Positions 5,508 to 63,554 of a DNA stretch of 64,000 nt are shown here, one piece after another. Every line of letters starts with the position of its first letter. Within the stretch, counting starts at the first letter, position 1. This stretch comes from Macrostomum lignano (taxonomy: Eukaryota), in the NCBI GenBank assembly GCA_002269645.1, contig NIVC01001780.1, positions 124,001 through 188,000 on the forward strand. Direction: 5' to 3'. Below the pieces are notes generated by a model. The model was not told the DNA's origin. It ran no database searches and saw nothing but the letters and a program-made list of their open reading frames with translations. Made by a program: the position numbers and the translations under genes.

Positions 5508-7704
5508 GTCTACCGGCCGCTCTACATGATGGACTGTCGAGGCGGTGCAGGCGGCGGCGGTCCCCCAGACTGCCTGGCAATGCAGGAGCACTTCGCCCCG
5601 ATCAACCGCAGCAACCACACCTTCGGCAGAGCTGTGCCCGGGTCGCCAAGGGTAAGCGAGGAACCACCTGCTTGCTTGGAGTTGGTGATGGCATTGAATG
5701 CAAACATCTGCTGCTGCCATTGGGATATAATTCACAATTATCCCTACGCAGAATAGGATATTTATCCTTTCTCTCCTATCGCTGTGCTGACTCTGTTCTG
5801 CAGATGTGATGAAAAAAAAATTAGGGACTGTTATGGACCAGTGTTATTCTGACCATATGATGGAGTTATTTTTTCTAATTTTACAAAGAAAATTCACTTT
5901 TCTGACTTTTGAATTTTGGATTTGAATTTGTCTGCTTTCTGTGGGCGTCTGTCTATCTAAAAATATTACGAATAGTAATAGTCAATGTCCTAGATTTAAA
6001 TTACATGTAAGGTCGTTTTATATCTTGACGTCTCTAGATATTCAGTAGATTTCTCTATATTTCCATTAGATCTCTGTAGATATTCAGTAGATATCTCTAG
6101 ATATTTACTAGTTCTTTCTAGATATTCAATAGATTTCTCTAGATATCCAGTAGAGTTCTCTAGATATTCACATAATTTCTCCAGATATTCACTAGATTTT
6201 TCTAAACATCCACGAGATTTCTAAAGATTTCTACTAGATCTTTCTAGATGTCCACTAGATGTCTCTATTTTTTACACTAGATCTCTCGATCTTCAGACAT
6301 CTATGTGTACATGTTTGAGATGTCTCAAATTAATTCACTAGAGAAGTTTTTTCCGTATTTCTCTAAATAGACAGATAATCCAGACGATCGCTGATGCCAC
6401 AACCAACAGAAGCACTATATATAAAATCATTTCATCATATTTCTGATTTCTATCCAGTTATAAAATATCACACACACACACTGCGCCACCAACTATGCAA
6501 AGGAAGTCAGGCATATTGGGGGTGGATTTAATCCTAACTAAACTGACCCAACTGACCCAATAAATATGATTGACAATTGGTCGTTCCATAGGAAGAGAGA
6601 GGAGACAGAGGGGCTGCCGCTACGCACACACTGCCAGCTAGTGGTGGACAAAGCGTTGCTATTAAATAGCCTTTGAACTGAGACCCTGGCGGCCCACGTG
6701 AGCCCACGTGACACCATTTTTTACTTTTTCATCTCTCGCCCTCTGCAGCATTGATTTCGCCACTTCAGTCATCAGAGTCTAATAATTGGGCTAGACATTT
6801 TTTCTACTTCTCAACTGGGTCTTTAAATTTCTGCTAACCCCCGACTTATTATCAATTAATAATAAAAATTGATTACACCTGCCCCAATTGGGCCCCAGAT
6901 GTGCAACCGACAGCTCAGCCGCAGCTATTAATACCCTCAATTAACGCAGCTAATGCTGGCACCCATTTTACAGCTGGGTGAACTGGAGCAATGCAGAGTT
7001 AAATGTCCTGCTCAAGGAAAGACACAAATTGTTCCGAGCGGGATCGGGAATCGAACCCCCAACCTTCAAGTCGTGAGTCCGACGCTCTAATCACTAGGCC
7101 TGTAAACATCACAGAGGTCTAGGTTTGGGCCCAGCAGTCACAGATCTCCCTGTGTTTGAGAGCGTTGACTAGAGGACCTTACTTTTAGTGACTGACTATT
7201 GCCAACCTCGGACTTCGGACATTTGTTAGTCAGAAAAAACATAAAGAGGGACTTTAGGAGCAATTTTTTGGGGAAATTTTCAAGACTGCAAAGTTTGTAC
7301 AATATGACACTTTGCAGCGAGGGACAAACAAACCTGTTTTTTTTCTAGCCTATAAATCGTTTCTATTAAAGTCACTCAATGTTTCTGGGGCCATACTTTG
7401 TCAGAGCTTGGCAAACATCACTGTTTGCGAGGGCAGGGAAAGTATAGAACTCTTTCCTACATAGTGTGACAGAGGCCATATAATATCCCTTAAGTTATAC
7501 TCCCCCAAATCTCCCCTTCCCACAGCCCGTGTTTGCAAGTTTGCTCACCCATACAGCGGGGTCTGGGCTGGGGGGGGGGGGCTGGAAGTTTGAGAAGGTA
7601 AAACATTAAAGCGACTCGGTTAAGTTCCGTCAGTGAGACAAGCCGCATAATGTGTGCTCAAATATCTGAGCACAGACAGACACAGCTCGGGGGTTCGGAC
7701 ACTG

Positions 7705-10700: not shown

Positions 10701-12387
10701 GAATGAAGAGACACGAAATTGACGTGACTGCATAGGTATTGAATCGGTGTCAGTGGATGCCAGTCTGGGGGTGTCAGGGGTGCCAGTTTGGGTGTCAGGG
10801 GTGCCAGTTTGGGTGTCAGGGGTGCCAGTTTCGGTGTCAGATGTGCCAGTTTGGGTGTCAGAAGATGCCAGTCTGGGGGTGTCAGGGGATGCCAGTTTGG
10901 GTGTCAGGGGATGCCAGTTTGGGTGTCAGGGGATGCCAGTTTGGGTGTCAGTAGATGCCAGTTTGGGTGTCAGGGGATGCCAGTTTGGGTGTCAGAGGTT
11001 GCCAGTTTGGGTGTCAGTAGATGCCAGTTTGGGTGTCAGAGGTTGCCAGTTTGGGTGTCAGTAGATGCCAGTTTGGCTGTCAGGGGATGCCAGTTTGGGT
11101 GTCAGTAGATGCCAGTTTGGGTGTCGGAGGTTGCCAGTTTAAGTTTATTATGATCAAGCCGCAGATTTTATCCCTCAGCTACAATGTTGTGGCATCCGCT
11201 TATTCATGAAATCCAGCTACAGCTAAAGAGATTAAAATTCAAAAAATAGCCGAGGTAGAAGCTTACCAGTTTATCCTGCTACCGGCATAACAACGGATAG
11301 AAGGTCAACTAAGAATTTATTGTTGTCAGGCACACATCATTTACAACTTGCTTTACCAACCTTAATTTTTTGTGTCAGTCAAGCTACTGATGAAGATGAG
11401 ACCTTGGGGAGGCTGAGCATGAAGTTTAACATTATTTGAGTTCAAAGAACGGCAACTTTGATAATCAGTGGAGTTGAGTATAGTGCAGTGTTTACCTGAT
11501 AACTCTCTAGAGCTGTCCTACGACTCTCTAGATCTGCCTAGATAACTATAGATCTCACTATATCTCCTTAGTTATCTAGTTCTCTCTAGAACTCTCTAAA
11601 ACTCTCTATATCTCTTTAGAACTCTCTAGATCACTTTAAGAACTATTTAGAACTCTCTAGAACTCTCTAAAACTCTCTATATCTCTTTAGAACTCTCTAG
11701 ATCACTTTAAGAACTATTTAGATCTGACTAGGACTCTCTAGATCTCTCTAGAACTCTCTATAACTCTCTGGATCATTCTAGAACTCTCTAGGTCTCTCTC
11801 TATAACTCTCTAGAACTCTCTAAACTTCTTTTCTGTATCTCTTCAAGAGCTCTCTAGATCTCTTTCAGAGCTCTCTAGATCTCTCTCAGAGCTCTCTAGA
11901 TCTCTCTCAGAGCTCTCTAGACCATACAAGACTCTCCAGATCTCTCAACTTTATAGATCTGTCGAGAACTTCCTCTTTGGCTATCCTGAAGTTTCTCGAT
12001 CTTAAACACGAATATCTGCCGCCTTCATAAATGCTTATTGTAATTTTAATAATCACCATTCCTTCTCTTCCACTACAGCCTCCGCCAGCAATGCTCTCTT
12101 GCTCAGGCGGCCTGGCTCCAGTCTCTCAGAGCCAGCAGCAGCAGCCGCCGCCTCATCAGCCTCATCACGAGCGTCGCAACTCCGAAGACGCCAGCGTGGA
12201 CGACTCCGGACGAGGCGGTTCCGTTGAGGACATCAAACCAGGCGTAGGCGGAGTCCTTGGCACCTTCGTGTCGCCGGCTTCAGCCAGCAGCGGCAGCGGC
12301 GCCACAATCAGGAGGGGCCAGCAGCACCAGCACGCCAGCACCCTCCTGGTCAGACCGGATCCCAGCGCCTCAGGCACCATGATCTGA
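5508..12387 (+). CDS. Last coding exons of an unidentified spliced gene (exons 5508-5651 and 12079-12387)
   Basis: Exon 5508-5651 is flanked by TTGCAG and GTAAGC (phase 0/0, VYRPLYMMDC...GSPR). Exon 12079-12387 follows CTTCCACTACAG (phase 0, PPPAMLS...GTMI*). Both are GC-rich islands in AT- and repeat-rich introns. The family is not recognised, and joining the two exons is inference. Confidence 0.65.
6035..6300. repeat. Degenerate TCTCTAGATATTCA-type tandem repeat
   Basis: Repeated TCTCTAGA/CTAGAT units. Confidence 0.7.
6869..7100 (-). mobile_element. SINE family A, copy 2
   Basis: Same body as 546-800; includes the family 3' end (ACACCTGCCCCAATTGG on +). Confidence 0.8.
7704..7793. repeat. 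(CT)n microsatellite
   Basis: Read directly. Confidence 0.95.
7950..8280. repeat. (CTACTGT)n 7-bp degenerate repeat
   Basis: Read directly. Confidence 0.9.
8735..10190. repeat. Minisatellite with 22-bp (CTGATTCACTCCTGAGTGCTTC) and 24-bp (CTGATTCACTCCTGATGAGTGCCA) variants in alternating blocks
   Basis: About 60 units with block-level duplication. Confidence 0.95.
10750..11140. repeat. Minisatellite, 22-bp unit GGGTGTCAG(GGG/TAG)ATGCCAGTTT
   Basis: About 17 units read directly. Confidence 0.95.
11500..11960. repeat. Degenerate CTCTCTAGA tandem repeat
   Basis: Read directly. Confidence 0.8.
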
Positions 12388-14468: not shown

Positions 14469-16539
14469 TCAATAAGCATAGAATGCCGCCTCCGCCACTG
14501 TAATAATTTTATTGGCAGCGTCAGAATATCTGTGATTAATTTTTATGTCCTTGACAGAGTTGTACTTGCACTGGTCCTGAACGGCATAGTATTTGCCTGG
14601 AAGATATTTTTTATCAAATCGGCAGACCTTCGCATTGTTAGGCATGACAACTACTTGGAGAATCCTGCTGCCCTCTCTGCAGCAGCCGTACTTGCCCCAG
14701 ACAATGACGCCCCTCAAGTTTATTGAAGTGCCGAATTTGTATACAAAATGCGTTCCACTTTCTGGATCCGTAGGCTTGGAGTGCAACTTGTGCAGCGCCT
14801 GTCCGTAGGAATGCACGTCATTGTCGATTGTGCGCTCGCAATTTGGCGTGCTCTCCCGGCAGGAGACTTTCACCTTTTCTGAAATGGCAGTTTCGGAGTC
14901 GGGGGTGAGGTTCTCAGAGGCTTATTTTTTATTAGAGGCAGGGGGTTGTGTGCACCCGGGCGCACTTTAAGCGACATTGGCACACAACCGGCGAGAGGCA
15001 TTACTGCCCATTCCGCCGACTCCCCTGAGCAGGCATACAAGCGCGCGGATACGTGCGCAGGCACACACTCACACAGGAGTGTACAGCGGCCCTAACTTTA
15101 TATTATCGTTAGGCATGTACACTTCACTGCGCCTTGGGGGGTTGGCTCTCAAGGCACGATTGCACGAGCAGAGCCAAGCCGAGATTCCAATTCAGCCCCA
15201 AATTAATGTGGCTGCACTTGGAATCGAGCCTGGGTCGCTGGCACACCAGAGCAGCTGCGCTACCGCTGGGCTACGGCCCCCCTTCTCAGAGGCTTACTTA
15301 AGAGTGTTCTTTCGACCTTTCGTTTAAGTTCTAGACTTTCTCGAGGTAAAAGAGACAGAAAATAAATAATCATAATCGATAGCACCTGTCCCATTTGTGC
15401 CAGATGTGCAACCGACAGCTCAGCCGCAGCTATTACCAATGCTCAGTCCAAGGCTTGGGGGTCGCCACAAACCCTCAGTTACCCCAGCTAATGCTGGCAC
15501 CCATTTTACAGCTGGGTGAACTGAAGCAATGCAGAGTTAACTGTCTTGTTCAAGGACACAAATTGTTCCGAGTGGTATCGGGAATAGAACCCCCGACCTT
15601 CTAGTCGTGAGTCCGACGCTCTAACCAGTAGGCTACAGCCTAGAATAAGCCTAGAATATTGCAATATTGATATCCAAGGGTTCTCAAGGGGTTTAACGAG
15701 CTTGACATAACAAACAAGAGAACTGCCGGAAGCTCACTGTAGCAGCGGTTCTCCCCAAAGCTGGCACCGCCGCCAGGGCACAGGTCGCATTTAGTCATGC
15801 CGGACCTGATCGCCAGGGCGAAGTTCCTGTCGCACTGCTGGCATTCGGCTGCACCCTCCGCGTCAGAGAAGGTGCCCGGTGGGCAGGCCTTGCACTGCTT
15901 GCTGCCTTCCTCAGAGAACTGGCCGGCCGGGCAGCGGGTGCAAGCCGAGGCGCCCGCCGCTGAGAAGCTGCCGGCCGGACACGGCGTGCATTCGATCGAA
16001 CCGCTCCGGCTTGAGAACTTGCCGGCCGGACACGACGTGCAGGCGGCCGCTCCAGCTGGGGAGACGTGGCCCGGCTGGCACTTGCTGCACTTTGCTGCTC
16101 CAGCCTTGCTCCAGGTGCCGGCGGGACACTGAACGCAGGCTGGGGAGCCGCTGAAGCTGATGAAGCTACCGGCAGGGCACGGCGTGCAGCTCGACAAGCC
16201 GTCCGTGGAAGCCATCGAGCCTTTGGCGCACTTCTGGCAGTTCGCCGAGCCCGAGCTGGCGGCGAAGCTGCCCGGCCAGCACTTAGAGCAGGCGGCGGCC
16301 CCGGCGCGGCTGTATGAGCCTTTCGGGCACTTCTGGCACTTGGAACTCACGGCTATCTCCCTATAAGTGCCGGCGCTGCAGGGCTCGCAGATGAAGTCCG
16401 AGTCATTGCTGAGCTGGTGGCCCGACAGGCACACGCTGTGGTCTTCACGCTTGTCTCTTGGCAGTTCCTCGGCCAAATTGAGAGATGGTCCGGTCAGAGC
16501 GGCCACCAGAGCCGCGGCAACTAGCAGAGAAAAGTTCAT
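14469..16539 (-). CDS. Secreted 403-aa protein: signal peptide, 13 CxxC (GCC2/GCC3, TNFR/ephrin-receptor-like) repeats, and a C-terminal F-type-lectin/discoidin-like domain; exons 16539-15738 and 14878-14469
   Basis: [17 protein letters not shown] signal-like start; CxxCPAGxFS repeats every 16-17 aa. The phase-1 donor A|GTGAGC matches acceptor TTTCAG|AA, giving 1212 nt, or 404 codons. The domain assignment of exon 2 is by motif resemblance only. Confidence 0.8.
14925..15282 (-). mobile_element. SINE family B, copy 2, with 14-bp TSD
   Basis: Near-identical to 5039-5413; TSD TTCTCAGAGGCTTA at 14911-14924 and 15283-15296. Confidence 0.92.
15383..15637 (-). mobile_element. SINE family A, copy 3
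   Basis: A box TAGCCTACTGG, B-box-like GGTTCTATTCC and the shared body. Confidence 0.8.
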
Positions 16540-16545
16540 TGCTGA

Positions 16546-16690
16546 GAGTAGATTGTGTGAGTAGATTGTGTGAGTAGATTGTGTGAGTAGATTGTGTGAG
16601 TAGATTGTGTGAGTAGATTGTGTGAGTAGATTGTGTGAGTAGATTGTGTGAGTAGATTGTGTGAGTAGATTGTGTGAGTAGTTTGTGCAC
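16546..16690. repeat. Minisatellite, 13-bp unit GAGTAGATTGTGT
   Basis: About 11 units abutting the acceptor of the Cys-rich gene. Confidence 0.95.
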
Positions 16691-17094
16691 AAGATAGGAT
16701 CTGGCTAAGGCAGCTACTCATTTTATATCTCAGTAGCTGAATTTCCGAAACTATTTTTCTTTGAGGAATGTTAAAAGCAAATTAAATTTTAAAACGTTGT
16801 TTCAATTTTTAAAGGGCAAAACTTTCAGTGCAGGATTCCAAGCACTCATAATTCCTATTATTCCAATTATTAGAAAATTCCCACACAGAAAATATCAATC
16901 TATTTCTTGTTTGAGCTGCAAATTTTGCAAATTTTGAAGGTAAATTGAGAATAATTTCAACTACATTCTGCGCATTAAAATTTAATTTCTAGTTAAGGGA
17001 ATGCATTTCTTGATTGTGAAATGCATTTCTTGATTGTGAAATGTATTTCTTGAGTTGAGCTAAGCTCACCCACCTCACTCCGCACCCACACAGG

Positions 17095-17383
<289 letters not shown>

Positions 17384-17513: not shown

Positions 17514-17660
17514 GCTCACACCTGCCTCCCCTGGCGGGCTGATAGCTCAAGAGACTCTGTCTCCTGATTTTCACCTTGCAAGGCGCACTTCGAAGGGTAC
17601 TCGTCCCGTGGGTGTTAAGGCAGGCCCCCTTGGGCCCTGCCGAGCTGATTCGTTGGCGCC
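17514..17660 (+). ncRNA. Predicted HDV-like (double-pseudoknot) self-cleaving ribozyme in the LINE 5' UTR
   Basis: Manual fold: P1 GCTCAC(17514-19)/GTGGGT(17608-13); P3 GGG/CCC around L3 TACTCGT; P1.1 C17600-G17614 and A17599-T17615; P4 17619-17641; J4/2 C17645-T-G-A; P2 CGAA/TTCG plus GGCGC/GCGCC. Activity untested. Confidence 0.72.
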
Positions 17661-17692
17661 GGGTCCTGGTGTGACCATAAACGCACCCTCTA

Positions 17693-19407
17693 ATGTCCCA
17701 GTGTAACTCCGTGCTGATGGACGCTTGGCCAGGGAGTAGTCTGGTCGCTAACGGTTCCCCTTGCGCTTTTGGGTCCCCCGCAGGGTGGTATTTTGCTTTT
17801 TGGGGGCCTGCCGCTTGGTTTGGGGTTGCGGCCTTGCGGCTCTTTGCCTGTGTTCTGCAGGAAGTCCCACCTTTTTACTTCCAGCCAATGGCTTCTAACC
17901 GAAGAAATCAACCGGCTGTGGATGACACAGTGCCTCCGGCCTCGGCTGGGGCCGTGGACTCCTCGGCCATACCACCTGCTACCATCGGGGACGCCTCGGC
18001 GAGACCCGTGGAGCCAACTCTGAGCGGTGCCTCCGAGAAGACACCTGCTACTCCAGCTGCTAAGAAACGCAGCACCACCTCTGGAGCTGCCCGCCGTCGA
18101 CTTAACAAGGCGAGGCGGGCCAAGGAGGGCGGAAGCCAAACCGGTGCCAGGGGCCAACGGCCCGCGGCAGCGGAAGCTTCCCAGTCTGGGGCGGTGGCGG
18201 AAGAGGGCCTCGAGCCCACGGAAGCCCCTGCCCAGGATAGGGAGGCCGATGCAGCCGGGAGGGTGGACAGCCCACCTGAAGAAAGCTCCACTGACCCCCG
18301 GGCCTCCTACGCTGATGCGGCAAAGAGGCAACCGGCGGTTGTCATCCTGGGAAAGGACGCGCGCCTGTCTCCCGATCAGCTGAAGCAGGTGAGAAGTGCC
18401 GTTGATGGCCTCCTGTGGAAGCAAACTCTGAAGGGCACGCCTCTGAACATTCATTCGAATGCGACGAGGGACTCGTGCCTTCTCATTTGGCCCAGTGATG
18501 CTGACTCGGGTCGGCGGCTCCTTGAGCTGCTGCCCGAGCAGAGCTGGGACCTCAACCTAGCCTTCTGCAGAGAGGACGAGCGCCCCCGGACCAAGAGGCA
18601 TCGAATCTGGGTCCCGGCCAGGAGCGTTGTTACCTCTGCTGACGAGCTCCGGAAAGGACTGCTAGCAGTCAACCGGGAGCTTCCCGCCGCGGGCCTAGTG
18701 GTGCATGACACCCTTAAGCGCACCGACGGCACTGGCTTCACAGCCATCCTGGGGCTGTCGGACGCCTGGATGAGGCGTTATCCACACGGCAGCTTCATCA
18801 ACGTCGGCCTTTGGAAGCTGCGCATCCGCTCCTACGAGGCCGACCCTCCCCGTGGCAGTGAGCAGGGCGGGCGGGATGCGGAGGCGGCCGGGCCGAGGCG
18901 CAAGCCTCTGCTCAGACTGCCAAAGCAAATCGCCCTGCCCGGCAGCACGGCCGCGCGGGCAAAGCTGAGCGCGCTGCTGAGGGCGGAGGCGACCGACGCC
19001 CGGCGCGCAGCACCAAGCGGCGCGGCCTGTACCAGCGTGCAGCTGAGGCAGTCCGTACCGCCAAAATCTCCCAGCTGAGGCGAGAGGTCGCCGGGATGCC
19101 TAGGCGCACCAGTTCGTCCAGGGAGGGTGGGGACGTCCCAGCTGGGCCCAACCCCTCGGGGCAGGGCCGACTGGAGACGGACCCGCCTGCCCAGGCGGCT
19201 GGCTGCTCCAGGGCATTGGGCCAATCTGAGGCGGAGGACCCCATGGATGGTGGGCAAAGGGCGGCGAACGCTGCCTACTGCCTTCCGGCCAATCGGGGGC
19301 CTTTTGCTGAAGAAGAGCCCATGGACACCGGCGACCCCGACCCGAAGCCGGTGAGCGCCGAGGAGGAGGAGGAACTCCTGGCGGCTGCAACATCCGATCT
19401 GCAATGA
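17693..19407 (+). CDS. Retrotransposon ORF1 (gag-like, DUF4780-like central domain), one frameshift between 18862 and 19075
   Basis: ASYADAAKR motif and RIWVP...LLAVNREL...NVGLWKLRIR pattern resemble LOA-type ORF1. A second frame is open from 18862 to the TGA at 19405-19407. Confidence 0.75.
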
Positions 19408-22400
19408 TGCCAGCGACTACCTGGTGTCTGCAGATCAACACCCAGCACTGCGTGGCGGCGTCGGTCAACCTGATGCGCACGGCAGAGCAACAGCTTCCGG
19501 GCCTGGTCTTCGTACAGGAGCCCTGGATGACTAAAGGTAAGCCAAATAATGTGCCATCTGGCTACCACTGTTTTTGCATGGCGGGCTCTCAGCCTCGCCC
19601 AAGATCTTGGTCTTTGCTGCAAAAGCTTTTGAGGCATGGATGAGACCTGATCTCTCGACTGGGGACATCTGTGTTGTTCAAATCAATAACCTCATTCCCA
19701 ATAAACCTGTGCTGGTAGCTTCTGCCTATTTCCCGGGCGATGCCCCAGTTGTCTGCGACGCGTTAGTCAACCTTACTGACTATGCTGCGTCCCATCGGTT
19801 CGAGCTGCTCATTGCAGGGGATGTGAACGCACACCACCTGCATTGGGGCAGCAAGAACATCAATAGCAGAGGCGAGAGCTGCTGGCCTATGTCAGCAGCA
19901 CTAACCTCAACTTCTGTAACGTGGGCAATGCACCAACGTTCAATAATGGGCGGTGGGCCGAAGTCATCGACACCACCATCGCCTCACCCGGACTGCTTTC
20001 CGCAGTTACGGGCTGGCGAGTGTGGGACGAGGACTCGCTCTCGGACCACCGCTTTATCCGCTTTTGCATTGGGCCGACCAAGCAAAAGCCTAAGGTCACT
20101 TGGAGTCGGAACGTCAGGAACACCGATTGGGCCGCCTTTGGCTCGAAGCTGAGCCGCGGCCTTCGGGATCTTGACCCCCCAGTGACCTCTCTGACTGCCA
20201 GGTGGTGGACGATCTCGCCTCCTCCCTGGGCGGGGCGATCACCACTGCCTTTGAAGCAGCCTGCCCCTAAAGGCCTATAAAGGCAAGAAATCTGCTCCCT
20301 GGTGGAACCCAGAGCTCGGGCCCTTCGGCGCCGAGCCAGGACCCTCCAAAGGCGAGCGCTCAAAACCAAAGACCCATCTGACAGAGAGGCCTATACCCGT
20401 GCGATCCACGAGTTTAAGGGCCAAGTCAGAAGGGCCAAGACGGCCAAGTGGCGCCAATATTGCGAAGGGCTTGAGGGCTCTCGCCCCGTAGCCCGCGTGG
20501 TTAAGGCACTCACTAATGACCGTTTTTCTAAACTCTCTGTTGTGAAGAGACCTGACGGCTCGGTCACAGAGAGTTCGGAAGAGACTCTAGAGCTCATGCT
20601 CAACAGTTTTTTCCCTAAATCTCCGACTCAGCAGGGCCCGCCCGACCACACAGTGGGAGGGCAAGGCCTAGCAAAGTCTATGATCACCAAAGACCGCATT
20701 ATTAGAGCGGCAAGGTCCTTTAACCCGTTCAAGGCGCCTGGGCCCGACGGCATCTACCCAGCGTTCTTGCACGAGGCGGTGAAAAACCACCGCTTTCCTG
20801 GACCTGCTCTGTCGTCTCCTCGAGCTTGTGTGGAGCTGGGCTATGTACCAGTTGCATGGAGAGAGGCCCGGGTGGTCTTTATCCCCAAGCCTGGAAAGAG
20901 CGACTACCAATCGGTGAAGGCCTTCAGGCCTATCAGCCTCACTTCTTTCTGCCTCAAGCTCCTCGAGAGACTGGTGCTTTGGCGCCTACTTTCGGTCGAG
21001 CTGAAGCGCTTCCCACTCTCGCAGAACCAGCACGCCTTCCGCGCGGGCAGGTCAACGAGAGTGCTCTCCATGTCATTGTTGACTTCCTGGAGAGGGCCGT
21101 TCTTGGCAGCGGCTTTGCCCTCTCGCTTTTCCTGGACATTGAGGGGGCCTTCGACAACGTCATCTTCGAGGCCTTTTGCAGAGCCCTGGAATCCAGGGCC
21201 ACGCACCCTCACCTTGTCCGGTGGATCATGTTCATGATCCAAACCGCACTGTTGTGGCCCACCTGAGCGGCAGCTCTCTTTCGGTGCCTGTCCTGAAAGG
21301 GGGCCCCCAGGGCGGCGTTCTCACCCCCGTTCTCTGGAACATGGTCATGGATGAGTTGCTTTGCAGTGATCTCCACGACCCCATTCTCAAGGTGGGCTAT
21401 GCCGATGATGTGACCGCGATATGCGCGGGCCCCTCGGTTGATACCATCAGAGACCTTCTGCAGGGCTTTCTGGGACGAGCGGAGCGTTGGGCAGACCAAT
21501 GTGGCCTTAGACTCTCAGAGTCGAAAACCACAGCAGTCATGTTTACCAACAAACTGCTCTGGACCATTAAGCCCCTCACCCTCTATGGAAAGAATATTTC
21601 CATGGAGAAGCAGGTCCGCTGCCTGGGCCTCACTCTGGACCACAGGCTTAACTGGACTCCGCACATTCAAACTAAAGCCAAAAAAGCCCTGGCTGTACTG
21701 GCTCAGATCAGGCGCGCCGTGGGCACCACCTGGGGGCTCACCCCCAGGAAGCTGTGGTGGATTTACACTGCCATCATCCGCCCCTCGATCAGTTACGCCA
21801 GCCTCGTGTGGGCTAGCGGCCTGAGCGTCAAGAGCAACCTCGACGCTCTCTACAAAATCCAGGGCAGAGCCTGCCGCATGACTATGGGCGCTCCACCCTC
21901 TACTCCTTTTGAAGGCATGAATGCCTTCCTCTGTGCCCCTCCTTTGGATATTTATATCAAAGGAGAGGCGGCGAAGAGCACCCGGCGTCTTCTGGATGCT
22001 GGGGTGGCCTTCAAGAAAGTGCGGGCCTTTAAGAAGCGGTCGCTTATCCAGCACTCTGACCTCTGCCTCAAGGCTCTCGAGGAGTGTGGCGGGCTCAACA
22101 TTCTCACGGACTCGATCCCAGCCACCCTTCTCCTGAGCCAAAGGTATAAGGTCACCATTCAGCCTCGACACGAGGCGAGTGACAGCTGGAGCGACTCTGA
22201 AGTCCACTGTTACACTGACGGCTCTATGAGGCATGGTCTTTCAGGCTTCGGAGCTTGCGTCTTCTTCAAGGGAGAAGTGGTGTGGAGCTACTCCCAGCAC
22301 ACTGGGCTCAACTCCAGTGTTTTTCAGAGCGAGGTGCTTGCCATCAGCTCCTGCGCGGCAGAGCTGCGCCGAAGGCAGCTTAGCGGCCGGAAATTTATTT

Positions 22401-23101
22401 TTCACTCTGACAGCCAAGCAGCCCTTCGGGCCCTCTGCCGCAGCACCGCCAGCTCCAGGTCCGTCCTGGACTGCAACACCCAGCTCAACGGGCTTGCGCT
22501 AGGCAACCAGGTGGAGCTCAGATGGATCCCGGGCCACGCCGGCTTCCTCGGCAACGAGCGCGCTGACCTGCTGGCCAAGGCTGGCTCCGCCGGCGCGCTA
22601 TTGGGGCCGGGCCCGGGTGCCCCCATCCCCGCCTCGGTGATCAATTCCCGCGTTAAGCGCTGGGCTGACTCCGAGCATCTCCGCAGGTGGCATGACACCC
22701 GGAATTGTAGGCAATCCCGTGCTGCCGTCCCCTGTCCCTCTCCTCTCCTGCGTAGAGCCCTCCTCAGGCTCAACCGCAGAGACCTCAGAGCAGTTAGCAT
22801 GGCCCTCTCCGGGCATGGCTGCTTCTCTCGCCACCGCTTCCTTCAGGGCCAAGTACCCGAGGAGCGGTGCCCCTTCTGCCGCTCAGGCAGTGAAAACGCC
22901 GAGCATTTTATCTGCCACTGCCCGGCTTTCACCAGGGCCAGGCTTACTCACCTCGGGCCAAACCCGGTTCTCTCCGACGTTTGCAGGCCCGAGAGCATCC
23001 CGCTGCTCGCCCGGTACCTCAGGGACACCGGACGAGCTGATTTCTTCCCCACCGTCGGTGAGGAGGACCGCGCTGCAGGCGAGACCGACGGGTCCCCCTG
23101 A
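19404..23101 (+). pseudogene. Retrotransposon ORF2: AP endonuclease, reverse transcriptase, RNase H and C-terminal CCHC; frameshifted in this assembly
   Basis: QINTQH/VQEPW/GDVNAH/DSLSDH (APE); KAPGPDG, FRPISL, QHAFR, LDIEGAFD, PQGGVL, YADD (RT); YTDGS, SEVLAI, SDSQAAL, WIPGHAG.GNERAD (RNase H); CPFC..HFICHC. At least 5-6 frame changes. Confidence 0.93.
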
Positions 23102-23669
23102 GCGACACCACTTCAACGGAAGTCGTTGGTCGCCAGGGGCTAGCGGAATGGGCGGTCTCCTCCGCCTCCTCGCTGCATCCGCCGGACGCCCCCTGCAGCT
23201 AAGTCAGTAAGTCAAGCCTCAGCAGGTATTGATGAAAAGGAAAAGCGGGAACACACAAGAGTTGCAAGTCTGGGAAGATGCAAAGCAATGCAAAGCAGAC
23301 AGTCCGCGATTCCCTCAGAGAAACTGCGCCCCCTCCCCTTCCTCAGTCTCGAGGTCAATTGCCGGGGGAGCCGGCGCTCCATCTCAGAAGCAGAAGTGGA
23401 TAGAGGAGTAAAAAAAAGAGGCAAGGGAGGAAGAGGGTGAGACGGAGATACCCTCACTTTTGAGTAGCTATGCAAATCTGCCCCCCGCTAAAGCGACTGG
23501 AAAACCTATTAAAGAAGAATTGCTCGCGTGTTCTCGACGCTCAGGAAGTGTGGGGCTCGTGCATTTCTCTTCTGGTAGGGGGATCTCTACAGAAATGGGG
23601 ATCCATTCATTCAAGATTTTGAACAAGAGGACGCCCTGTGTTAGTTTCTTTGAGACTATCAGATCTCAA

Positions 23670-24727
23670 GCCTTGGCCTTAGCCTTGCCTTAGCCTTGGC
23701 CTTAGCCTTGGCCTTAGCCTTGGCCTTAGCCTTGGCCTTAGCCTTGGCCTTAGCCTTGGCCTTAGCCTTGGCCTTAGCCTTGGCCTTAGCCTTGGCCTTA
23801 GCCTTGGCCTTAGCCTTGGCCTTAGCCTTGGCCTTAGCCTTGGCCTTAGCCTTGGCCTTAGCCTTGGCCTTAGCCTTGGCCTTAGCCTTGGCCTTAGCCT
23901 TGGCCTTAGCCTTGGCCTTAGCCTTGGCCTTAGCCTTGGCCTTAGCCTTGGCCTTAGCCTTGGCCTTAGCCTTGGCCTTAGCCTTGGCCTTAGCCTTGGC
24001 CTTAGCCTTGGCCTTAGCCTTGGCCTTAGCCTTGGCCTTAGCCTTGGCCTTAGCCTTGGCCTTAGCCTTGGCCTTAGCCTTGGCCTTAGCCTTGGCCTTA
24101 GCCTTGGCCTTAGCCTTGGCCTTAGCCTTGGCCTTAGCCTTGGCCTTAGCCTTGGCCTTAGCCTTGGCCTTAGCCTTGGCCTTAGCCTTGGCCTTAGCCT
24201 TGGCCTTAGCCTTGGCCTTAGCCTTGGCCTTAGCCTTGGCCTTAGCCTTGGCCTTAGCCTTGGCCTTAGCCTTGGCCTTAGCCTTGGCCTTAGCCTTGGC
24301 CTTAGCCTTGGCCTTAGCCTTGGCCTTAGCCTTGGCCTTAGCCTTGGCCTTAGCCTTGGCCTTAGCCTTGGCCTTAGCCTTGGCCTTAGCCTTGGCCTTA
24401 GCCTTGGCCTTAGCCTTGGCCTTAGCCTTGGCCTTAGCCTTGGCCTTAGCCTTGGCCTTAGCCTTGGCCTTAGCCTTGGCCTTAGCCTTGGCCTTAGCCT
24501 TGGCCTTAGCCTTGGCCTTAGCCTTGGCCTTAGCCTTGGCCTTAGCCTTGGCCTTAGCCTTGGCCTTAGCCTTGGCCTTAGCCTTGGCCTTAGCCTTGGC
24601 CTTAGCCTTGGCCTTAGCCTTGGCCTTAGCCTTGGCCTTAGCCTTGGCCTTAGCCTTGGCCTTAGCCTTGGCCTTAGCCTTGGCCTTAGCCTTGGCCTTA
24701 GCCTTGGCCTTAGCCTTGGCCTTAGCC
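23670..24727. repeat. Near-perfect 12-bp tandem array (GCCTTGGCCTTA)n
   Basis: About 88 units; only a single-base deletion near 23688 was noticed. Confidence 0.98.
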
Positions 24728-25181: not shown

Positions 25182-25520
<339 letters not shown>

Positions 25521-25974
25521 TAAAATTAGGCACCTTGTACCTCTTAACTCCTACAGGTATTGTAGATGAATCATCATATCTAATGTGTTTTCCGAAATAA
25601 CAAATTTTCGGAAGCTTGCAAATTGGACTGATTAATGGGTTTCCAATGACCCAGCTAGTAAGAAATGCTTCGTGTCTAAAATAACACTATAGCTTTCACC
25701 AATCTCCTTGATAACGAACAGGCGCCACATTAAACTCTTTAACTGGAACTTCGGGAGAAAAGGTGTGAAAGTTATTGGCACCGGATTACTGTTTCGTAGC
25801 ATCCATTGCAAAGAATTCGATTCTTCTGCATCCTTATCGATGGTACAATAACTTTCTATTTAGACCTGATTAAGATTACGAACAATATTTGTCACGCCTG
25901 AAAATAGGACAGCCAAGACCAATGTACACCCTTGACAGGGTTGCGGATTGGCTTTCACTTTGATCTGCGGCCTC

Positions 25975-32948: not shown

Positions 32949-33283
32949 ATGACCTACGGCCGGATTTCTTCCGACACAAACGAGACTTCAACAACCGCCA
33001 GCACAACTTGGGCAGCCATCGCTGATACAGTTGTCCAGTCCATGTCGGCAGCCGCCACCACGTCCACAGGGGACGGAGCTGACCCGGAGATAATCACCGA
33101 ATTGAATGTCTCCTCATCGGCCGCCGACAGCTCGGATTGCACAACGACAAGTTCCACTTCGGTTTCGTCATCCTCTGGCTCTGTCGACGGTCAGCCAGTG
33201 CAGCTTCGAATGTCTTCTCGGGAGTCGACAGTGCTCGCCGAAGCGCTGAGGCTTGCCGGTCGACGAAAAGTTGTCCGACCGTT

Positions 33284-33324
<41 letters not shown>

Positions 33325-35033
33325 TAGCGTTGACTCAGCCTCCGCCACCACCTCCGCCCCCGAGACCGTCTCTAGCCGGGCACAACATCTCCCATCGGCG
33401 ATCCGAAAGCGCCCAGGAAAAGTCGCAGAATGTGAAACAGCCCGCGATGCTGCAAAATACAGGCAGCACGAGGACGGAGAGCGAGGAGAACTACGGGCTT
33501 CCGCCAGCTACGAACCAGAAGCCTCTAGTTGGCAACATGGCGCCAGATTGGTCGCTCATGCAGCCGATGCTGCAGAAAATGGTAGCGGACATGTCAACCT
33601 CGGATAGGCGAAAGTACGCAGTCAATCAGCTGACGGAGGGAGACCTCAAAGACGCGATGCGACTGTTTTTAGAGAAACAAAAGACCAAACTGAGGCAGCA
33701 CTCGACCACCCAATCGAAAACCCCAGGCTCCGGTCAAACGCAGCGGGAAGTTGAGGTCAGCAGCGGTAGCGGAGACGGGCCTAGGCAGCTTGTTAAGCTG
33801 GTAATCTGTGTGCCCCGTCAGAAGCATCAGCACCGATCAATGTCAGTGTCCAGAACCAGCACTATCGACCAATCGGCCATCACCGCGGCCGGTCAGGCCA
33901 AGAAGCCTCCCCAGCCGGTTCTGTCGTCAAGACCAAAACAGTCTCAGCAGCCTTCAAAGTTGTCAATGCAGGACAGCGTACACCGGGGCAGCATAATGCC
34001 GGTGAAGATGGCCGTTCCAGCCAAGGAAGAGTCTCCAGAGGAGGACTGCCTGACGATGCCAGGAGTGGAGCTCTGCCGCGACAGCAGCACCAGCAACACC
34101 CCGCCAGCGGCAACGACGGCAGCCAAAGAAGCCAAGCCGTCTGACGTCACCAAGCTCGCGCAGTCGAAACCTGTCAATCAGCCGGTCGGGAAAGGTCACG
34201 AACGAATCTCGCTGGCTCCGGAGCTGATTGGTGGCCTCAGCAAGCGGTTGCAGAAGGAATACGACGAGGCGCAGAGTACTACCTCATTGCCGGGCAATCA
34301 GAAGAAGGACTGGAGTAACGATACCTCTAGCGATCAGGTGCACAATGATGCCAGCATCAAAGAGAACGCTAAAAAGGCGGAGACGGCTGTCGTCAAATAT
34401 CAACTGAACCTAACCAGTGAGGAAACAACCAAGAAAACAGAGTCTAACGAAGCCAGTGCAGGGCCAGACGAGGACAAGGAGGCAATCGCGGAAGACGAGG
34501 ACCCCTGGCCGCAGAAGGACTCTGTAGTTTTCTGCGACGAAGCCAACAGAGTGCAACGCGCTAGCGAGGAGATCATCGAAGAGGAAGATGAAGATGAAGA
34601 ATCTGAAGACGGCTCGGATTGTAAGAAGTCTCTGAGGTTGTCTTATCAAAAGGAAGAGGAGGAGAAGCTGCGAAGGCAGCGCGAACTCGAAGAGGCTGCC
34701 GAGGCGGCGGCTGCAGCAGAGGCGGCGGCGAAGCAGACGGCAATCAATGCGGCCATCAGGAATGAGCTGTGGCGCAGGCTGCTGTCAGCCAGGGTGCCAC
34801 GGCTGAGCTGCCCGCCAAAGCTCACCGGTCATCTGTCCGGTCACGAGGAGCAAGTGGCGGTTGCCAAGAGACTCATAGCCAACATGAGTCGAATGCAGCC
34901 CCGCCGTAGCCGTATGGACATGGAGCGGCTGAAGCACACACTGAAGCTGGACAACAAGGAGCTGAAGCTGAACCAGTGTCGAAGGAGCAGCAGCGACGAT
35001 ACAAACGGACAGGAGAAGTGGCTGGAGCTCTGA
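32949..35033 (+). CDS. Intronless 694-aa low-complexity protein of unknown function
   Basis: Long ORF in non-tandem, GC-rich sequence with poly-Q, poly-P and acidic tracts. Followed by an AT-rich 3' region with AATAAA near 35113. No family recognised. Confidence 0.8.
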
Positions 35034-44400: not shown

Positions 44401-47400
44401 TACAATACGTAATCCCTGCAATGAAAGTACTCGTATTTTTATTGCAATAATATTTAACCAATCAGTACTCACCCCAGACAAAGTAGATCCGCCATCCGTC
44501 GTTGTATCGCTCGAGTCCTGCCATTTCAAAGTCTGCGACAAGCGAACCAGCTGCACCTGAATCGGGATGGGCTTCAGGTTGAATATCTGCAGGGACAGGA
44601 GCTCCTCAACTGTAGGACGGAAATCCGGCAGCGGATGGGTGCAGGTGAAGAACACGTCCCGGATGTCATGACTCTCGATGCTGCAGAAGGATAACAGGTC
44701 GGTTGGTTAATGGCGAGTGTAAAATATCAAAATGCTACCTTGCTTTTACCACCCCTACAAGCACCCACCACCCCCACAAGCACCCACCACCCCTACAAGC
44801 ACCCACCACCCCCACAAGCACCCACCACCCCTACAAGCACCCACCACCCCACAAGCACCCACCACCCCACAAGCACCCACCACCCCACAAGCACCCACCA
44901 CCCCTACAAGCACCCACCACCCCTACAAGCACCCACCACCCCACAAGCACCCACCACCCCCACAAGCACCCACCACCCCACAAGCACCCACCACCCCTAC
45001 AAGCACCCACCACCCCCACAAGCACCCACCACCCCTACAAGCACCCACCACCCCTACAAGCACCCACCACCCCCACAAGCACCCACCACGCCCACAAGCA
45101 CCCACCACCCCAACAGACACCCAGCAGCCCTACAAGCACAACAATTATAACCAAAAGTATTCAAAGCCTCTAACCGAGTCAGCACTTTAGGCGGCGTATT
45201 GCTGGCAATCCTTTGCCAGACATCTAGAAAATTCTGGCACTCCTGATACGGTATACTATTGGTGACCATCTCTACAATGAGGATGCCAAATGCGAAAATG
45301 TCAACTTTTTCGTCGTATCGTTCCTGCAGCATCTCGGGAGCCATGTAGCCCAGAGTACCCAGCATAGTCTTGCGAGTCTGGGTCTTAGCCGTGGCCAATC
45401 CGAAGTCGCCAATTTTGATGTTGTAATATTCTTCGGGATTCTCGCCATCAGCGATGAACACGTTCTCGGGTTTGAGGTCGCGGTGGATCACTGGCGGGTT
45501 CATTCTGAGATGCGGTTTTTCAATTGGCGTTGATTGAGATTATGGGATTGGTTATTTGAGATTAAATTGATGATAGCTGAGATTAGGTATGTGACTAAAG
45601 GGTGAGATTGGGTGTGAGACTGAAGGGTGAGATTGGATATATGAGACTGAAGGGTGAGATTGGATATATGAGACTGAAGGGTGAGATTGGATATGAGACT
45701 GAAGGGTGAGATTGGATATGAGACTGAAGGGTGAGACTGGGTATGAGAATGAAGGGTAAGATTGGTTATATGAGAATGAAGGGTGAGATTGGTTATATGA
45801 GAATGAAGGGTGAGATTGGTTATATGAGAATGAAGGGTGAGATTGGTTATATGAGAATGAAGGGTGAGATTGGTTATATGAGAACGAAGGGTGAGATTGG
45901 TTATTAGAGAATGAAGGGTGAGATTGGATATGAGACTGAAGGGTGAGATTGGATATGAGACTGAAGGGTGAGATTGGGTATGAGAGACTGAAGGGTGTGA
46001 TTGGGTACGAGAATGAAGGGTAAGATTGGTTATGAGACTGAAGGGTGAGATTGGTTATTTGAGACTGGAGGGAGAGATTGGTTATTTGAGAATGAAGGGT
46101 GAGATTGGTTATGAGAGACTGAGGGCTGAGATTGGTTATTTGAGAATGAAGGGTGAGATTGGGTATATAAGACTGAAGGGTGAGAGTGGATATGAGATTG
46201 AAGGGTGAGATTGGCAATAAGTGAAAAGTAAGATTGGGACAATATTCGCAAAGCAGGAGGGCAATTCCCCAGCGACTCACTTATGATGCATATGCCGCAG
46301 CCCTTCGAGAATCTGCTGCATCCAAGACTGAAACACGTTGAAGTCAACCACAGCCTCTCTTGTCTGCTCGTTATAGAACGTCTTCATCTTCTCTTTAAGA
46401 GTGCCCTCGCTCATAAACTCTGTGACAATCACTGTGGCTTTGACTTTTTCGCCTCGATCGCCATTCTCTTCCAATTCGAAATAGAAATCGAACAGATCGT
46501 AGTAGCGGACTATGTTAGGGTGCTCGCATTTGATCATCATTTCCACCTGTGGGTTGTCGGTAATTTTTATGCTAATCACCCCAGACGAAAACGGTACCCA
46601 GGCTAAGAAGCGTCTCAAGAGTGGTTGCAGGCACTCGTAATGATTATAGAACTCTAAAACGACGATATGTCACCAATAAGTCGTCAGAGTCGCCAAAAAG
46701 CGTTGTCACCACTCGGAACAACCAGTGGGTAGCTTCTAAGCACAGGGAGAGGTGGGCTGACGCCCTCCGACTGCCGGCAATCTCGCTCGGCTGTCCCCTG
46801 TCGTTCCTCCACCCTGCGCAGGGCCCTGCTTGGACTCAACCGCAGGGACATCAGGGCGGTGGCCATGGCCCTCTGGGGTCATGGCTGTTTTGCCAGGCAC
46901 CGTCACCTCCAGGGAAAAATCCGCAGTGAGGAATGCCCATTCTGCCTCTCCGGTGTCGAGAATGCGGAGCACTTCATCTGTGAATGCCCCGCCTTTACTC
47001 AGGACAGGTTCACCTACCTCGGCCCGAACCCGGACCTCTCCGACGTTTTCAGGTCCAAGAATCTCTGCCTACATAAGGGCTACTGGGCAAGCGACTAACA
47101 ACCTCCTGGACTCTCCGGAGGGGGACCGCGCTGCGGACACCGGAACCACCGGAACTCCCTGCGGGCAGCAACGCCTCCTCGCTGCATCCGGATGCCCGGA
47201 GCCCCCTGCAGCTGAGTCAAGTCAAGTCGCCAAAAGAGTCAATTTGAGACATTTTATTGTCTACGACTCTGGAGCCGTTGAGTCGCTGCAAAATCACCGA
47301 GTTGCGTCTAAAGCCAACTTGCGTCACTTAATGAATTAAAATTGCATTTCGCATTATAACAACAAGTCTATTTAGTCTACTTAGAGTGAGTAGAAAGTTA

Positions 47401-63421: not shown

Positions 63422-63554
63422 CTGCTCGGGGTCAGGGGAGGTGAGGGGCGCTGGGCCTGACTTGCGGTACTTGAAATTGGAGGGATTGTCATGTGGGAAA
63501 ATAGGTGAGCTGGCATGCTCAGATTGAATTAAACAAAGACAGGCCGATCTAGAG

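What the first reader, a model, noticed from the sequence alone, without database searches (positions are those of the whole stretch)
17514..17660. HDV-like self-cleaving ribozyme in the 5' UTR of the full-length LINE
Seen: every element of the nested double pseudoknot can be placed in order. G1=17514 starts P1 GCUCAC, pairing with GUGGGU (17608-13, G1.U wobble). A structured J1/2 of about 60 nt follows (hairpins CCUGCC/GGCGGG and GAGAC/GUCUC). P2 is GGCGC..CGAA with UUCG..GCGCC. P3 GGG/CCC closes L3 UACUCGU, keeping the HDV U20, C22, C24 and G25 equivalents. P1.1 is C17600-G17614 plus a compensatory A17599-U17615 pair where HDV has C-G. P4 is a GC-rich hairpin (17619-41), and J4/2 is C-U-G-A with C17645 as the catalytic C75 equivalent. 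Known: HDV-like ribozymes process 5' ends of R2, RTE, L1Tc/ingi and some insect LOA/R1-group elements. Inference: this may be an unannotated member in a non-insect LOA-like lineage that makes an uncapped RNA 33 nt upstream of the first ORF1 ATG. One deviation is that P1 has 6 bp rather than the usual 7.
Basis: partly seen in the sequence, partly recalled or inferred. Interest (0 to 1): 0.9.

Follow-up and report, generated by a model that had tools for sequence, protein, structure and literature searches.

The report
HDV-like ribozyme heading a flatworm LINE
The leader of a retrotransposon in a Macrostomum lignano-like flatworm genome carries a well-formed, evolutionarily conserved HDV-type self-cleaving RNA fold that would cut the element's RNA free from upstream transcript: a new example of a known trick, with cleavage itself still untested.

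Summary
A generic HDV-like descriptor finds this locus and nothing else in 64 kb on either strand. [quoted passage not shown]

A related LINE on a Logan contig (L002; ORF1 47% identical) has the same core. P3, the L3 consensus bases, the P1 3' strand, UAA and CUGA are invariant. P2 and P4 keep pairing through four two-sided changes, and the L3 differences fall only at the free positions.

Weak points:
- No Rfam HDV-family model matches, even at E<=10.
- The P1 5' strand, and so the cleavage site, has no comparative support, because L002 is cut off upstream.
- No target-site duplication marks G17514 as the element's 5' end.
- The closest ORF1 relative (L001) has an unrelated leader.

Corrections:
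- The real ORF1 start is ATG 17888, 374 nt after G1, not 17693.
- The copy has at least four frameshifts.
- A 6-bp P1 is normal for the class.
- "LOA-like" is untested.

Verdict: probably a genuine HDV-like 5'-processing ribozyme, a new member of a known kind.

The parts
17514..17519 (+). P1 5' strand GCUCAC; predicted scissile bond is 17513/17514 (5' of G1)
   Evidence: Pairs with 17608-13 (6 bp, two G.U); duplex -5.8 kcal/mol. No comparative support, because L002 is truncated.
17520..17581 (+). Structured J1/2 insertion (62 nt) with hairpins 17521-38 and 17551-63
   Evidence: both hairpins are in the MFE. Its sequence is not conserved in L002, which has a different long hairpin there. A structured J1/2 (P1.2) is known in drz-Agam-2-1 (PMC4908430).
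17582..17594 (+). P2 5' strand (GGCG..CU.CGAA), extended helix with internal loop
   Evidence: Pairs with 17649-60. Three pairs change on both sides versus L002 and stay paired.
17595..17607 (+). P3 (GGG/CCC) closing L3 UACUCGU
   Evidence: P3 is invariant in L002. L3 differs from L002 (UUCCCGU) only at the two free N positions of UNCNCG.
17608..17615 (+). P1 3' strand GUGGGU (17608-13) and P1.1 3' side G17614, U17615
   Evidence: identical in L002. C17600-G17614 is conserved. A17599-U17615 is a U/U mismatch in L002.
17616..17644 (+). P4: core hairpin 17619-41, 2x2 loop AA/GA, closing pair U17616.G17644
   Evidence: The outer P4 pair G-C becomes U-A in L002, and the inner stem is replaced by a different hairpin. 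The closing pair U.G becomes U-A in L002 (U114-A147).
17645..17648 (+). J4/2 CUGA; C17645 is the proposed catalytic cytosine (C75 equivalent)
   Evidence: CUGA is invariant in L002 and fits CNRA. drz-Agam-2-1 has CUAA.
17649..17660 (+). P2 3' strand UUCG..GG.CGCC
17661..17887 (+). Conserved structured leader between the ribozyme and the ORF1 start; ends in a polypyrimidine tract + CAG (AG 17883-84)
   Evidence: 69% nt identity to L002. RNAalifold predicts a hairpin with two compensatory pairs. The Y-tract/CAG is seen in the window, L002 and L001.
17888..19407 (+). ORF1 (MASN...), 1-nt frameshift at about 18892 relative to the M. lignano protein P0004
19404..23101 (+). ORF2: APE endonuclease, RT, RNase H. 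Frame changes at about 19589-19631, 20149-20281 and 21143-21234
23669..24727 (+). 3' tail: (AGCCTTGGCCTT) x 88

Best explanation
Window 17514-17660 (+) encodes an HDV-like (nested double-pseudoknot) self-cleaving ribozyme. It forms the first about 147 nt of the RNA of an APE/RT/RNase H non-LTR retrotransposon in a Macrostomum lignano-like genome.

Proposed mechanism (inferred, not shown):
1. The element is transcribed as part of a longer read-through or host transcript.
2. As the RNA emerges, the J1/2 hairpins and P3 fold, P1 (17514-19/17608-13) and P1.1 form, and P4 and the extended P2 close the fold.
3. C17645 in J4/2, with a bound divalent ion, catalyses attack of the U17513 2'-OH on the 17513/17514 phosphate.
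4. This leaves a 2',3'-cyclic phosphate on the upstream RNA and a 5'-OH on G17514.

The released, uncapped LINE RNA keeps the folded ribozyme at its 5' end, followed by a conserved 227-nt structured leader and then ORF1 (ATG 17888). Because both P1 strands lie inside the element, a full-length cDNA made by target-primed reverse transcription would regenerate the ribozyme at each new insertion.

Shown: the fold fits at the stated coordinates, is far rarer than chance, and is conserved with covariation in one diverged relative. Inferred: cleavage, its position, and its role in 5'-end definition and translation.
For: 1. All elements are in order at the stated coordinates.
2. The descriptor gives one hit in 128 kb of strand, against 0.005-0.012 expected. 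It recovers drz-Agam-2-1. Even with the P1 requirement removed, it finds only this locus and its L002 homolog.
3. The MFE folds of both the window and L002 contain P2+P3 (7-nt loop)+P4.
4. L002 is 47% identical in ORF1 protein and 68-74% in coding nucleotides. Its core is 82% identical. P3, the L3 bases U1/C3/C5/G6, the P1 3' strand, the P1.1 G, UAA and CUGA are invariant. Differences fall at the L3 N positions and in helices. On the named structure 95% of cells pair and 4 pairs change on both sides, against 32-58% paired and 0 such pairs when partners are slid.
5. The position and strand are right: at the head of a LINE with APE, RT and RNase H.
6. The architecture matches the experimentally fast drz-Agam-2-1: structured J1/2, extended P2, L3 UNCNCGU, a UAA after P1.1, and CURA in J4/2 (PMC4908430).
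7. HDV-like ribozymes at LINE 5' ends are established for R2, R4, Dong, Baggins, L1Tc and RTE (PMC3774820, PMC6765202, PMC3185411).
Against: - No Rfam HDV-clan model matches at gathering score or at E<=10, in the window or L002.
- There are only two sequences, so covariation is thin: 41 of 500 shuffles reach the observed values.
- The L002 contig starts inside J1/2 and has no P1 5' strand within 92 nt of P3, so P1 and the cleavage site have no comparative support.
- The second P1.1 pair is A-U here and U/U in L002.
- P1 is weak (two G.U pairs, -5.8 kcal/mol). The MFE pairs GCU 17514-16 with AGC 17544-46 instead.
- The overall MFE z-score is only -1.4.
- No TSD abuts G17514, and 130 nt of unassigned sequence lie between the (ACAG)n repeat and G1.
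- The closest ORF1 relative (L001) has an unrelated, tandem-repeat leader with no ribozyme within 334 nt of its ATG.
- The whole leader is conserved about as well as the coding sequence, so conservation alone is not specific to the ribozyme.
Confidence: 0.72

Rival explanations
1. The HDV-like pattern is a coincidence inside a leader conserved for another reason, such as an internal promoter, a translation or packaging signal, or a binding site for the element's proteins. The RNA does not self-cleave.
For: The whole 5' leader is conserved at coding-like levels and has other conserved hairpins. There is no Rfam hit. P1 is unsupported by comparison and weak. No TSD sits at G1. The descriptor was written post hoc.
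Against: The chance expectation is 0.005-0.012 per window, or roughly 1e-4 for the sense strand of a 400-nt leader. Substitutions versus L002 avoid exactly the bases needed for HDV-type catalysis and are compensated in P2 and P4. A generic structured leader would not need UNCNCG, CNRA and a 3-bp P3 in this order.
Confidence: 0.15
2. The fold descends from a real HDV-like ribozyme, but this copy or lineage is catalytically dead or very slow. It persists as a stable 5' structure or simply as a relic in a decaying element.
For: The copy has at least four frameshifts. The second P1.1 pair is A-U rather than C-G, and unpaired in L002. There is a 2x2 loop between P4 and the catalytic C. P1 has two wobbles.
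Against: Every position known to be essential is intact and identical in L002. The frameshifts may be assembly errors, since the P0004 protein from another assembly or allele reads through 18892. One- or two-bp P1.1 helices and 6-bp P1 helices occur in active members (PMC4908430, PMC3774820).
Confidence: 0.1
3. The region is a protein-coding exon of a host gene, as in the UniProt M. lignano model P0004. That model translates 17596-17668 and splices it to 17885.
For: P0004 contains LVLVPWVLRQAPLGPAELIRWRRVL|PMASN, the +1-frame translation of the ribozyme's 3' part.
Against: The model is chimeric. Its upstream 'exon' 15746-16315 is antisense to a strong Ephrin_rec_like cysteine-rich exon. Its 3' half is LINE ORF1. 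The same stretch in L002 is in no conserved frame, and conservation there follows RNA pairing, not codons.
Confidence: 0.02

Closest known systems
drz-Agam-2-1 (Anopheles gambiae large HDV-like ribozyme; PMC4908430)
   Same: Both have a nested double pseudoknot with a structured J1/2 (P1.2) domain and an extended, interrupted P2. L3 is UNCNCGU, P3 is 3 bp, UAA follows P1.1, a U.G-type pair precedes the catalytic C, and J4/2 is CURA. P1 begins GCUC. Both are found by the same descriptor.
   Different: Here P1 is 6 bp with a G1.U wobble, against 7-8 bp with G1-C. P1.1 is C-G + A-U rather than two C-G pairs. J1/2 has two hairpins rather than one. P4 is short (about 9 bp) with a 2x2 loop at its base. 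There is no detectable sequence homology beyond the core consensus, the host is a flatworm, and no activity has been measured.
R2 / R4 / Dong / Baggins1 / L1Tc 5'-terminal HDV-like ribozymes (PMC3774820, PMC3185411, PMC4035085, PMC6765202)
   Same: An HDV-like fold sits at the 5' end of a non-LTR retrotransposon RNA and is proposed to release the element from a co-transcript. As in R4, Dong, Baggins and L1Tc, the P1 5' strand lies inside the element. P1 of 6-7 bp, a variable P4 and an imperfect P2 are all within the R2 range.
   Different: The element is an APE/RT/RNase H LINE with a separate ORF1 and a 12-nt tandem-repeat tail, not a site-specific REL-endonuclease R2. Its J1/2 is much longer. 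A 227-nt conserved leader separates the ribozyme from ORF1. The clade relationship to Baggins (LOA) was not tested.
Twister T-variant ribozymes at the 5' end of Perere-3 (RTE) in Schistosoma mansoni (PMC8501958)
   Same: This is the functional analogue in another flatworm: a self-cleaving ribozyme heading an APE-type LINE, co-transcribed and cleaved, with the ribozyme retained on the LINE RNA.
   Different: It is a different ribozyme class (twister, not HDV-like). In Perere-3 the P1 5' strand comes from the TSD or flank, whereas here both P1 strands are internal. For Perere-3 the TSDs abut the cleavage site, which could not be shown here.

Membership tests
HDV-like self-cleaving ribozymes | Nested double pseudoknot with P1, P2, P3, P1.1 and P4 in the canonical order and connectivity | tested here: met
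   Coordinates were verified. The descriptor hit is unique in the window. P2/P3/P4 appear in the MFE.
HDV-like self-cleaving ribozymes | Catalytic cytosine in J4/2 (C75 equivalent) in a CNRA context directly before the P2 3' strand | tested here: met
   C17645-U-G-A is followed by UUCG, which pairs with CGAA 17591-94. CUGA is invariant in L002.
HDV-like self-cleaving ribozymes | 3-bp P3 closing a 7-8 nt L3 with conserved U, C, C and G (UNCNCG) | tested here: met
   GGG/UACUCGU/CCC. L002 has UUCCCGU and differs only at the N positions.
HDV-like self-cleaving ribozymes | P1.1 of one or two pairs between L3 and the nucleotides after the P1 3' strand | tested here: inconclusive
   C17600-G17614 is present and conserved. 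The second pair is A-U here and U/U in L002. PMC4908430 speaks of 'one or two base-pairs'.
HDV-like self-cleaving ribozymes | P1 of 6-7 bp whose first nucleotide (usually G) is the cleavage site | tested here: inconclusive
   A 6-bp P1 with G1.U exists in the window. It cannot be checked in L002 because the contig is truncated.
HDV-like self-cleaving ribozymes | Helices supported by covariation among homologs | tested here: inconclusive
   P2 and P4 have 4 pairs changed on both sides and 95% of cells paired, against 32-58% for slid controls. With only two sequences, 41 of 500 shuffles reach this value.
HDV-like self-cleaving ribozymes | Match to a curated covariance model of the family (Rfam HDV, CPEB3, drz-Agam and related models) | tested here: not met
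   There is no hit at gathering score or at E<=10. This is a detection criterion rather than a definition. The models are narrow, cannot represent the pseudoknots, and would be broken by the 62-nt J1/2.
HDV-like self-cleaving ribozymes | Divalent-ion-dependent site-specific self-scission giving 5'-OH and 2',3'-cyclic phosphate, abolished by mutating the catalytic C | not testable with these tools
   This needs an in vitro transcription and cleavage assay.
Ribozyme-terminated non-LTR retrotransposons (5' processing) | Ribozyme on the sense strand upstream of the first ORF of an element encoding endonuclease and RT | tested here: met
   APE, RT and RNase H lie downstream on the same strand. ORF1 homologs were found.
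Ribozyme-terminated non-LTR retrotransposons (5' processing) | Full-length copies begin at the cleavage site, with the TSD or variable flank immediately upstream | tested here: inconclusive
   No TSD was found. Only one genomic copy is available, and P0004 maps to the same or an allelic locus.
   No reference LINE library was available. Only the APE + RT + RNase H architecture and a weak TRAS1 (R1-clade) endonuclease hit at E=0.019 were obtained.

The most novel reading that the evidence does not exclude
The ribozyme may be one half of a two-way leader. Ribozyme cleavage at G17514 would make the uncapped full-length RNA used as the retrotransposition template. A strong polypyrimidine-CAG acceptor sits just before the ORF1 ATG in all three related elements. 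It could let the same co-transcript be cis-spliced or spliced-leader trans-spliced into a capped ORF1/ORF2 mRNA. M. lignano is known, from general knowledge, to use SL trans-splicing. That would be a LINE separating its template and messenger RNAs by two different 5'-processing reactions.
Probability: 0.1. Interest if true: 0.7.

Novelty: new member of a known kind. Interest (0 to 1): 0.45.

Why it matters
HDV-like ribozymes are an established way for promoter-poor LINEs to free their RNA from host transcripts. Documented cases are mostly R2, insect RTE/Baggins elements and trypanosomatid L1Tc. In flatworms the papers I found report a predicted R2 ribozyme in planaria and twister variants in Schistosoma Perere-3.

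A conserved HDV-like ribozyme in a Macrostomum APE/RT/RNase H LINE would extend the mechanism to another LINE lineage and phylum-level branch. It would do so in a transgenic-tractable regeneration model. It would also show that curated covariance models miss large-J1/2 members. The gain is incremental rather than conceptual.

Tried and rejected
- Rfam cmscan: whole window at gathering score, and 281-nt, 161-nt and L002 slices at E<=10. No HDV-family hit, only chance miRNA or leader matches.
- Other copies in the window: none for the 5' part. Only a 72% match to the 3' end, at 46776-47226.
- ORF1 protein searches (single sequence and alignment): five proteins in all.
- The look-up of encoding contigs: only P0001 and P0002 had contigs. 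Five queries were not on record: window ORF1, P0004, P0005, and two leader ORFs.
- A six-frame chimeric 'protein' of the leaders, meant to fish out spurious ORF calls over related UTRs: nothing.
- Metagenome DNA scans: the leader block gave 0 hits. The ribozyme core gave one hit, L003, a chance match in bacterial-looking DNA with no P3.
- Viral contigs core scan and the search for related loci on viral and prokaryotic genomes: nothing.
- TSD search between the flank upstream of G1 and the flank after the tail: only 7-mers that belong to the tail repeat.
- Local alignment of L002 1-92 and of the L001 leader to the window leader: not above shuffled scores.
- P0004 first looked like a second LINE copy. 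tblastn shows it maps to this same or an allelic locus, so I dropped it as independent evidence.
- Pfam on ORF1 homologs: no family.
- The conserved CUGAUGR block downstream looked hammerhead-like. It has no Rfam support and is better explained as one arm of a conserved hairpin.
- The Ruminski 2011 and Webb 2009 papers are not held in the library.

Full report
**1. Observation.**
- P1 is GCUCAC 17514-19 with GUGGGU 17608-13: six pairs, two of them G.U, including G1.U17613.
- J1/2 is 62 nt and holds two hairpins: CCUGCC 17521-26/GGCGGG 17533-38 and GAGAC 17551-55/GUCUC 17559-63.
- P2 is GGCGC 17582-86/GCGCC 17656-60 plus CGAA 17591-94/UUCG 17649-52.
- P3 is GGG 17595-97/CCC 17605-07 and closes L3 UACUCGU.
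- P1.1 is C17600-G17614 plus A17599-U17615.
- P4 is the GC-rich hairpin 17619-41.
- J4/2 is CUGA 17645-48.

One refinement: U17616.G17644 can close a 2x2 loop (AA/GA) at the base of P4. That puts C17645 directly after a pair. L002 has U114-A147 at the same place.

**2. Is it more than chance?** I wrote a generic HDV-like descriptor with these requirements:
- P1 of 6-7 bp starting with G
- J1/2 of at most 100 nt
- P2 of at least 4 bp abutting P3
- P3 of 3 bp
- L3 matching UNCNCGN(N)
- G after the P1 3' strand
- P4 of at least 4 bp
- CNRA in J4/2

It hits one place in the 64-kb window on both strands, and that place is 17514. In 1000 dinucleotide shuffles of the window the strict form averaged 0.005 hits. 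Shuffles with the composition of the LINE gave 0.002 per 6.26 kb. A relaxed form (G1 paired to U or C, longer P4) averaged 0.012. It still gives only this locus, and it recovers the experimentally validated drz-Agam-2-1 sequence taken from PMC4908430 Table S1. With the P1 requirement dropped altogether, the only hits in the window and all fetched loci are this site and its L002 homolog. The descriptor was written after seeing the candidate, so the rates are optimistic, but its elements are the published consensus. RNAfold puts P2, P3 (7-nt loop) and P4 in the MFE on its own. The overall z-score is only -1.4, and the MFE pairs GCU 17514-16 locally instead of in P1. That outcome is expected for a pseudoknot, but it is not positive evidence for P1.

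**3. What surrounds it.** Downstream on the same strand are three parts of a non-LTR retrotransposon.
- ORF1 has homologs but no Pfam family.
- ORF2 carries APE endonuclease, RT and RNase H.
- The tail is a 1,059-bp repeat, (AGCCTTGGCCTT)88.

A UniProt Macrostomum lignano protein (P0004) is 99% identical to ORF1, so the window is M. lignano or something very close. The conserved start of ORF1 is ATG 17888 (MASN...), not 17693. Homology to P0004, P0001 and L002 begins there. In L002 the ATG equivalent to 17693 is followed by a stop after four codons. So G1 lies 374 nt, and the ribozyme's 3' end 227 nt, upstream of ORF1. The copy is full-length in extent only. ORF1 has a 1-nt frameshift at about 18892 relative to P0004. 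ORF2 changes frame at about 19589-19631, 20149-20281 and 21143-21234. These could be mutations or assembly indels.

**4. Comparative evidence.** Only one informative relative could be obtained: Logan contig L002 (ERR14788467, organism unknown). Its ORF1 is 47% identical in protein and 68% in nucleotides over the conserved domain. Positions 81-162 of L002 carry the same core.
- Invariant: P3 GGG/CCC, the P1 3' strand GUGGGU, the GU after it, UAA and CUGA.
- L3 is UUCCCGU against UACUCGU, different only at the two free positions of UNCNCG.
- The P2-proximal CGAA/UUCG becomes CAGA/UCUG, which is two compensatory swaps. A distal G-C becomes U.G.
- The outermost P4 pair G-C becomes U-A, and the inner P4 is replaced by a different hairpin.

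On my named structure, 95% of cells pair and four pairs change on both sides. Sliding the partners gives 32-58% paired and zero such pairs. With two sequences the shuffle control is weak: 41 of 500 reach the observed value. The L002 MFE also contains P2, P3 and P4 (z = -2.6). The second P1.1 pair (A-U) is U/U in L002. The L002 contig begins inside J1/2 and has no RYYYRY partner for GUGGGU in its 92 upstream nucleotides. Its J1/2 is unrelated in sequence but also forms a long hairpin. So P1, and with it the cleavage site, is not corroborated.

**5. Evidence against, and limits.**
- No Rfam HDV-clan model matches the window or L002, at gathering score or at E<=10. I treat this as a failed detection criterion rather than a failed definition. 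Those models are narrow, cannot encode the pseudoknots, and would be disrupted by a 62-nt J1/2.
- No TSD links the flank before G1 to the flank after the tail. About 130 nt of unassigned sequence lie between the (ACAG)74 repeat and G1, so the 5' boundary of the element is unknown.
- The closest ORF1 relative, L001, has an unrelated leader built of about 95-nt tandem repeats, with no ribozyme within 334 nt of its ATG. The ribozyme leader is therefore not universal in this group.
- The whole leader is conserved about as well as the coding sequence.
- P0004 initially looked like a second copy carrying the ribozyme. It maps exon by exon onto this window, so it is the same or an allelic locus, and it is a chimeric gene model. 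One of its 'exons' is antisense to an Ephrin_rec_like exon.

**6. Mechanism.** The best-supported reading is the standard one for LINE-borne HDV-like ribozymes. The element is co-transcribed with upstream sequence. The RNA folds into the double pseudoknot. C17645 with a divalent ion promotes attack of the U17513 2'-OH. The LINE RNA is released with a 5'-OH at G17514 and the ribozyme retained as its 5' structure. Because both P1 strands are internal, each full-length insertion would regenerate the ribozyme. The fit and its conservation are shown. Cleavage, its site and its role are inferred.

**7. Comparison with known systems.**
- A 6-bp P1 is normal: '6- or 7-bp P1' in PMC4908430, '6 or 7 bp' in PMC3774820.
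- Structured J1/2 domains with an extended P2 are the hallmark of drz-Agam-2-1, where they accelerate cleavage (PMC4908430). The candidate shares that ribozyme's UNCNCGU L3, the UAA after P1.1 and CURA in J4/2.
- HDV-like ribozymes at LINE 5' ends are documented for R2, R4, Dong, Baggins, L1Tc and RTE (PMC3774820, PMC6765202, PMC3185411, PMC4035085).
- In flatworms, the papers I found report a predicted planarian R2 ribozyme (PMC3774820) and twister variants on Schistosoma Perere-3 (PMC8501958).
- Searches for Macrostomum or non-R2 flatworm cases found none.

This is a new member of a known kind. The 'LOA-like' label is untested: only the domain architecture and a weak TRAS1 endonuclease hit are available.

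**8. Verdict.** I put 0.72 on a genuine, selectively maintained HDV-like 5'-processing ribozyme. The rivals are a coincidental motif in a leader conserved for other reasons (0.15), a decayed or inactive descendant (0.10), and a host coding exon (0.02). Interest is moderate (0.45). The finding is well formed, missed by Rfam, and sits in a tractable flatworm model, but the principle is established.

Noticed in passing
window 17661-17887; L002 163-435: The 227-nt leader between the ribozyme and ORF1 is conserved at about 69% nt, the same as the coding regions. RNAalifold predicts a long conserved hairpin (about 17686-17704 with 17711-17735, containing CUGAUGG..GCUUGGCCAGGGAGUAGUCUGGUC) with two compensatory pairs. 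It might be a translation or packaging element for an uncapped RNA.
   Followed up: partly
window 17866-17890; L002 about 415-438; L001 about 288-337: All three related elements have a strong polypyrimidine tract ending in CAG just upstream of the ORF1 ATG (window CCACCTTTTTACTTCCAG|CCAATGG). This looks like a 3' splice or SL trans-splice acceptor. The P0004 gene model uses GT 17669 / AG 17884 as an intron.
   Followed up: no
window 5580-5678, 12055-12348, 15746-16315, 17596-17668, 17885-19404: UniProt M. lignano protein P0004 ('DUF4780 domain-containing') is a chimeric gene model. It joins + strand 'exons' (one antisense to a cysteine-rich Ephrin_rec_like exon at 15640-16692 on the - strand), part of the ribozyme, and LINE ORF1. 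It reads through position 18892, where the window copy is frameshifted.
   Followed up: yes
window 19402-19409: The ORF1 stop codon TGA (19405-07) overlaps the ORF2 start ATG (19404-06), an AUGA overlap suggesting termination-reinitiation coupling. In L002 the two ORFs are instead separated by about 48 nt.
   Followed up: no
window 23669-24727, 17090-17383, 25182-25522: The LINE tail is unusually long: 88 copies of AGCCTTGGCCTT (1,059 bp). The element is flanked by large microsatellites, (ACAG)74 immediately upstream and (TAC)113 downstream.
   Followed up: no
L001 1-334: The closest ORF1 relative (Logan SRR28338163) has a completely different 5' leader made of about 95-nt tandem repeats, a monomer-type possible promoter. 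This points to modular swapping of 5' leaders between related LINE lineages.
   Followed up: partly
window 46776-47226: A fragment 72-83% identical to the 3' end of the LINE (22710-23216), probably a 5'-truncated copy of a related family.
   Followed up: no
window 56788-58725 (-), 62692-63516 (-), 32949-35033 (+): Host genes: an apparently intronless 645-aa DNA topoisomerase I ORF and a V-ATPase subunit H exon. A 694-aa + strand ORF has no Pfam match.
   Followed up: no
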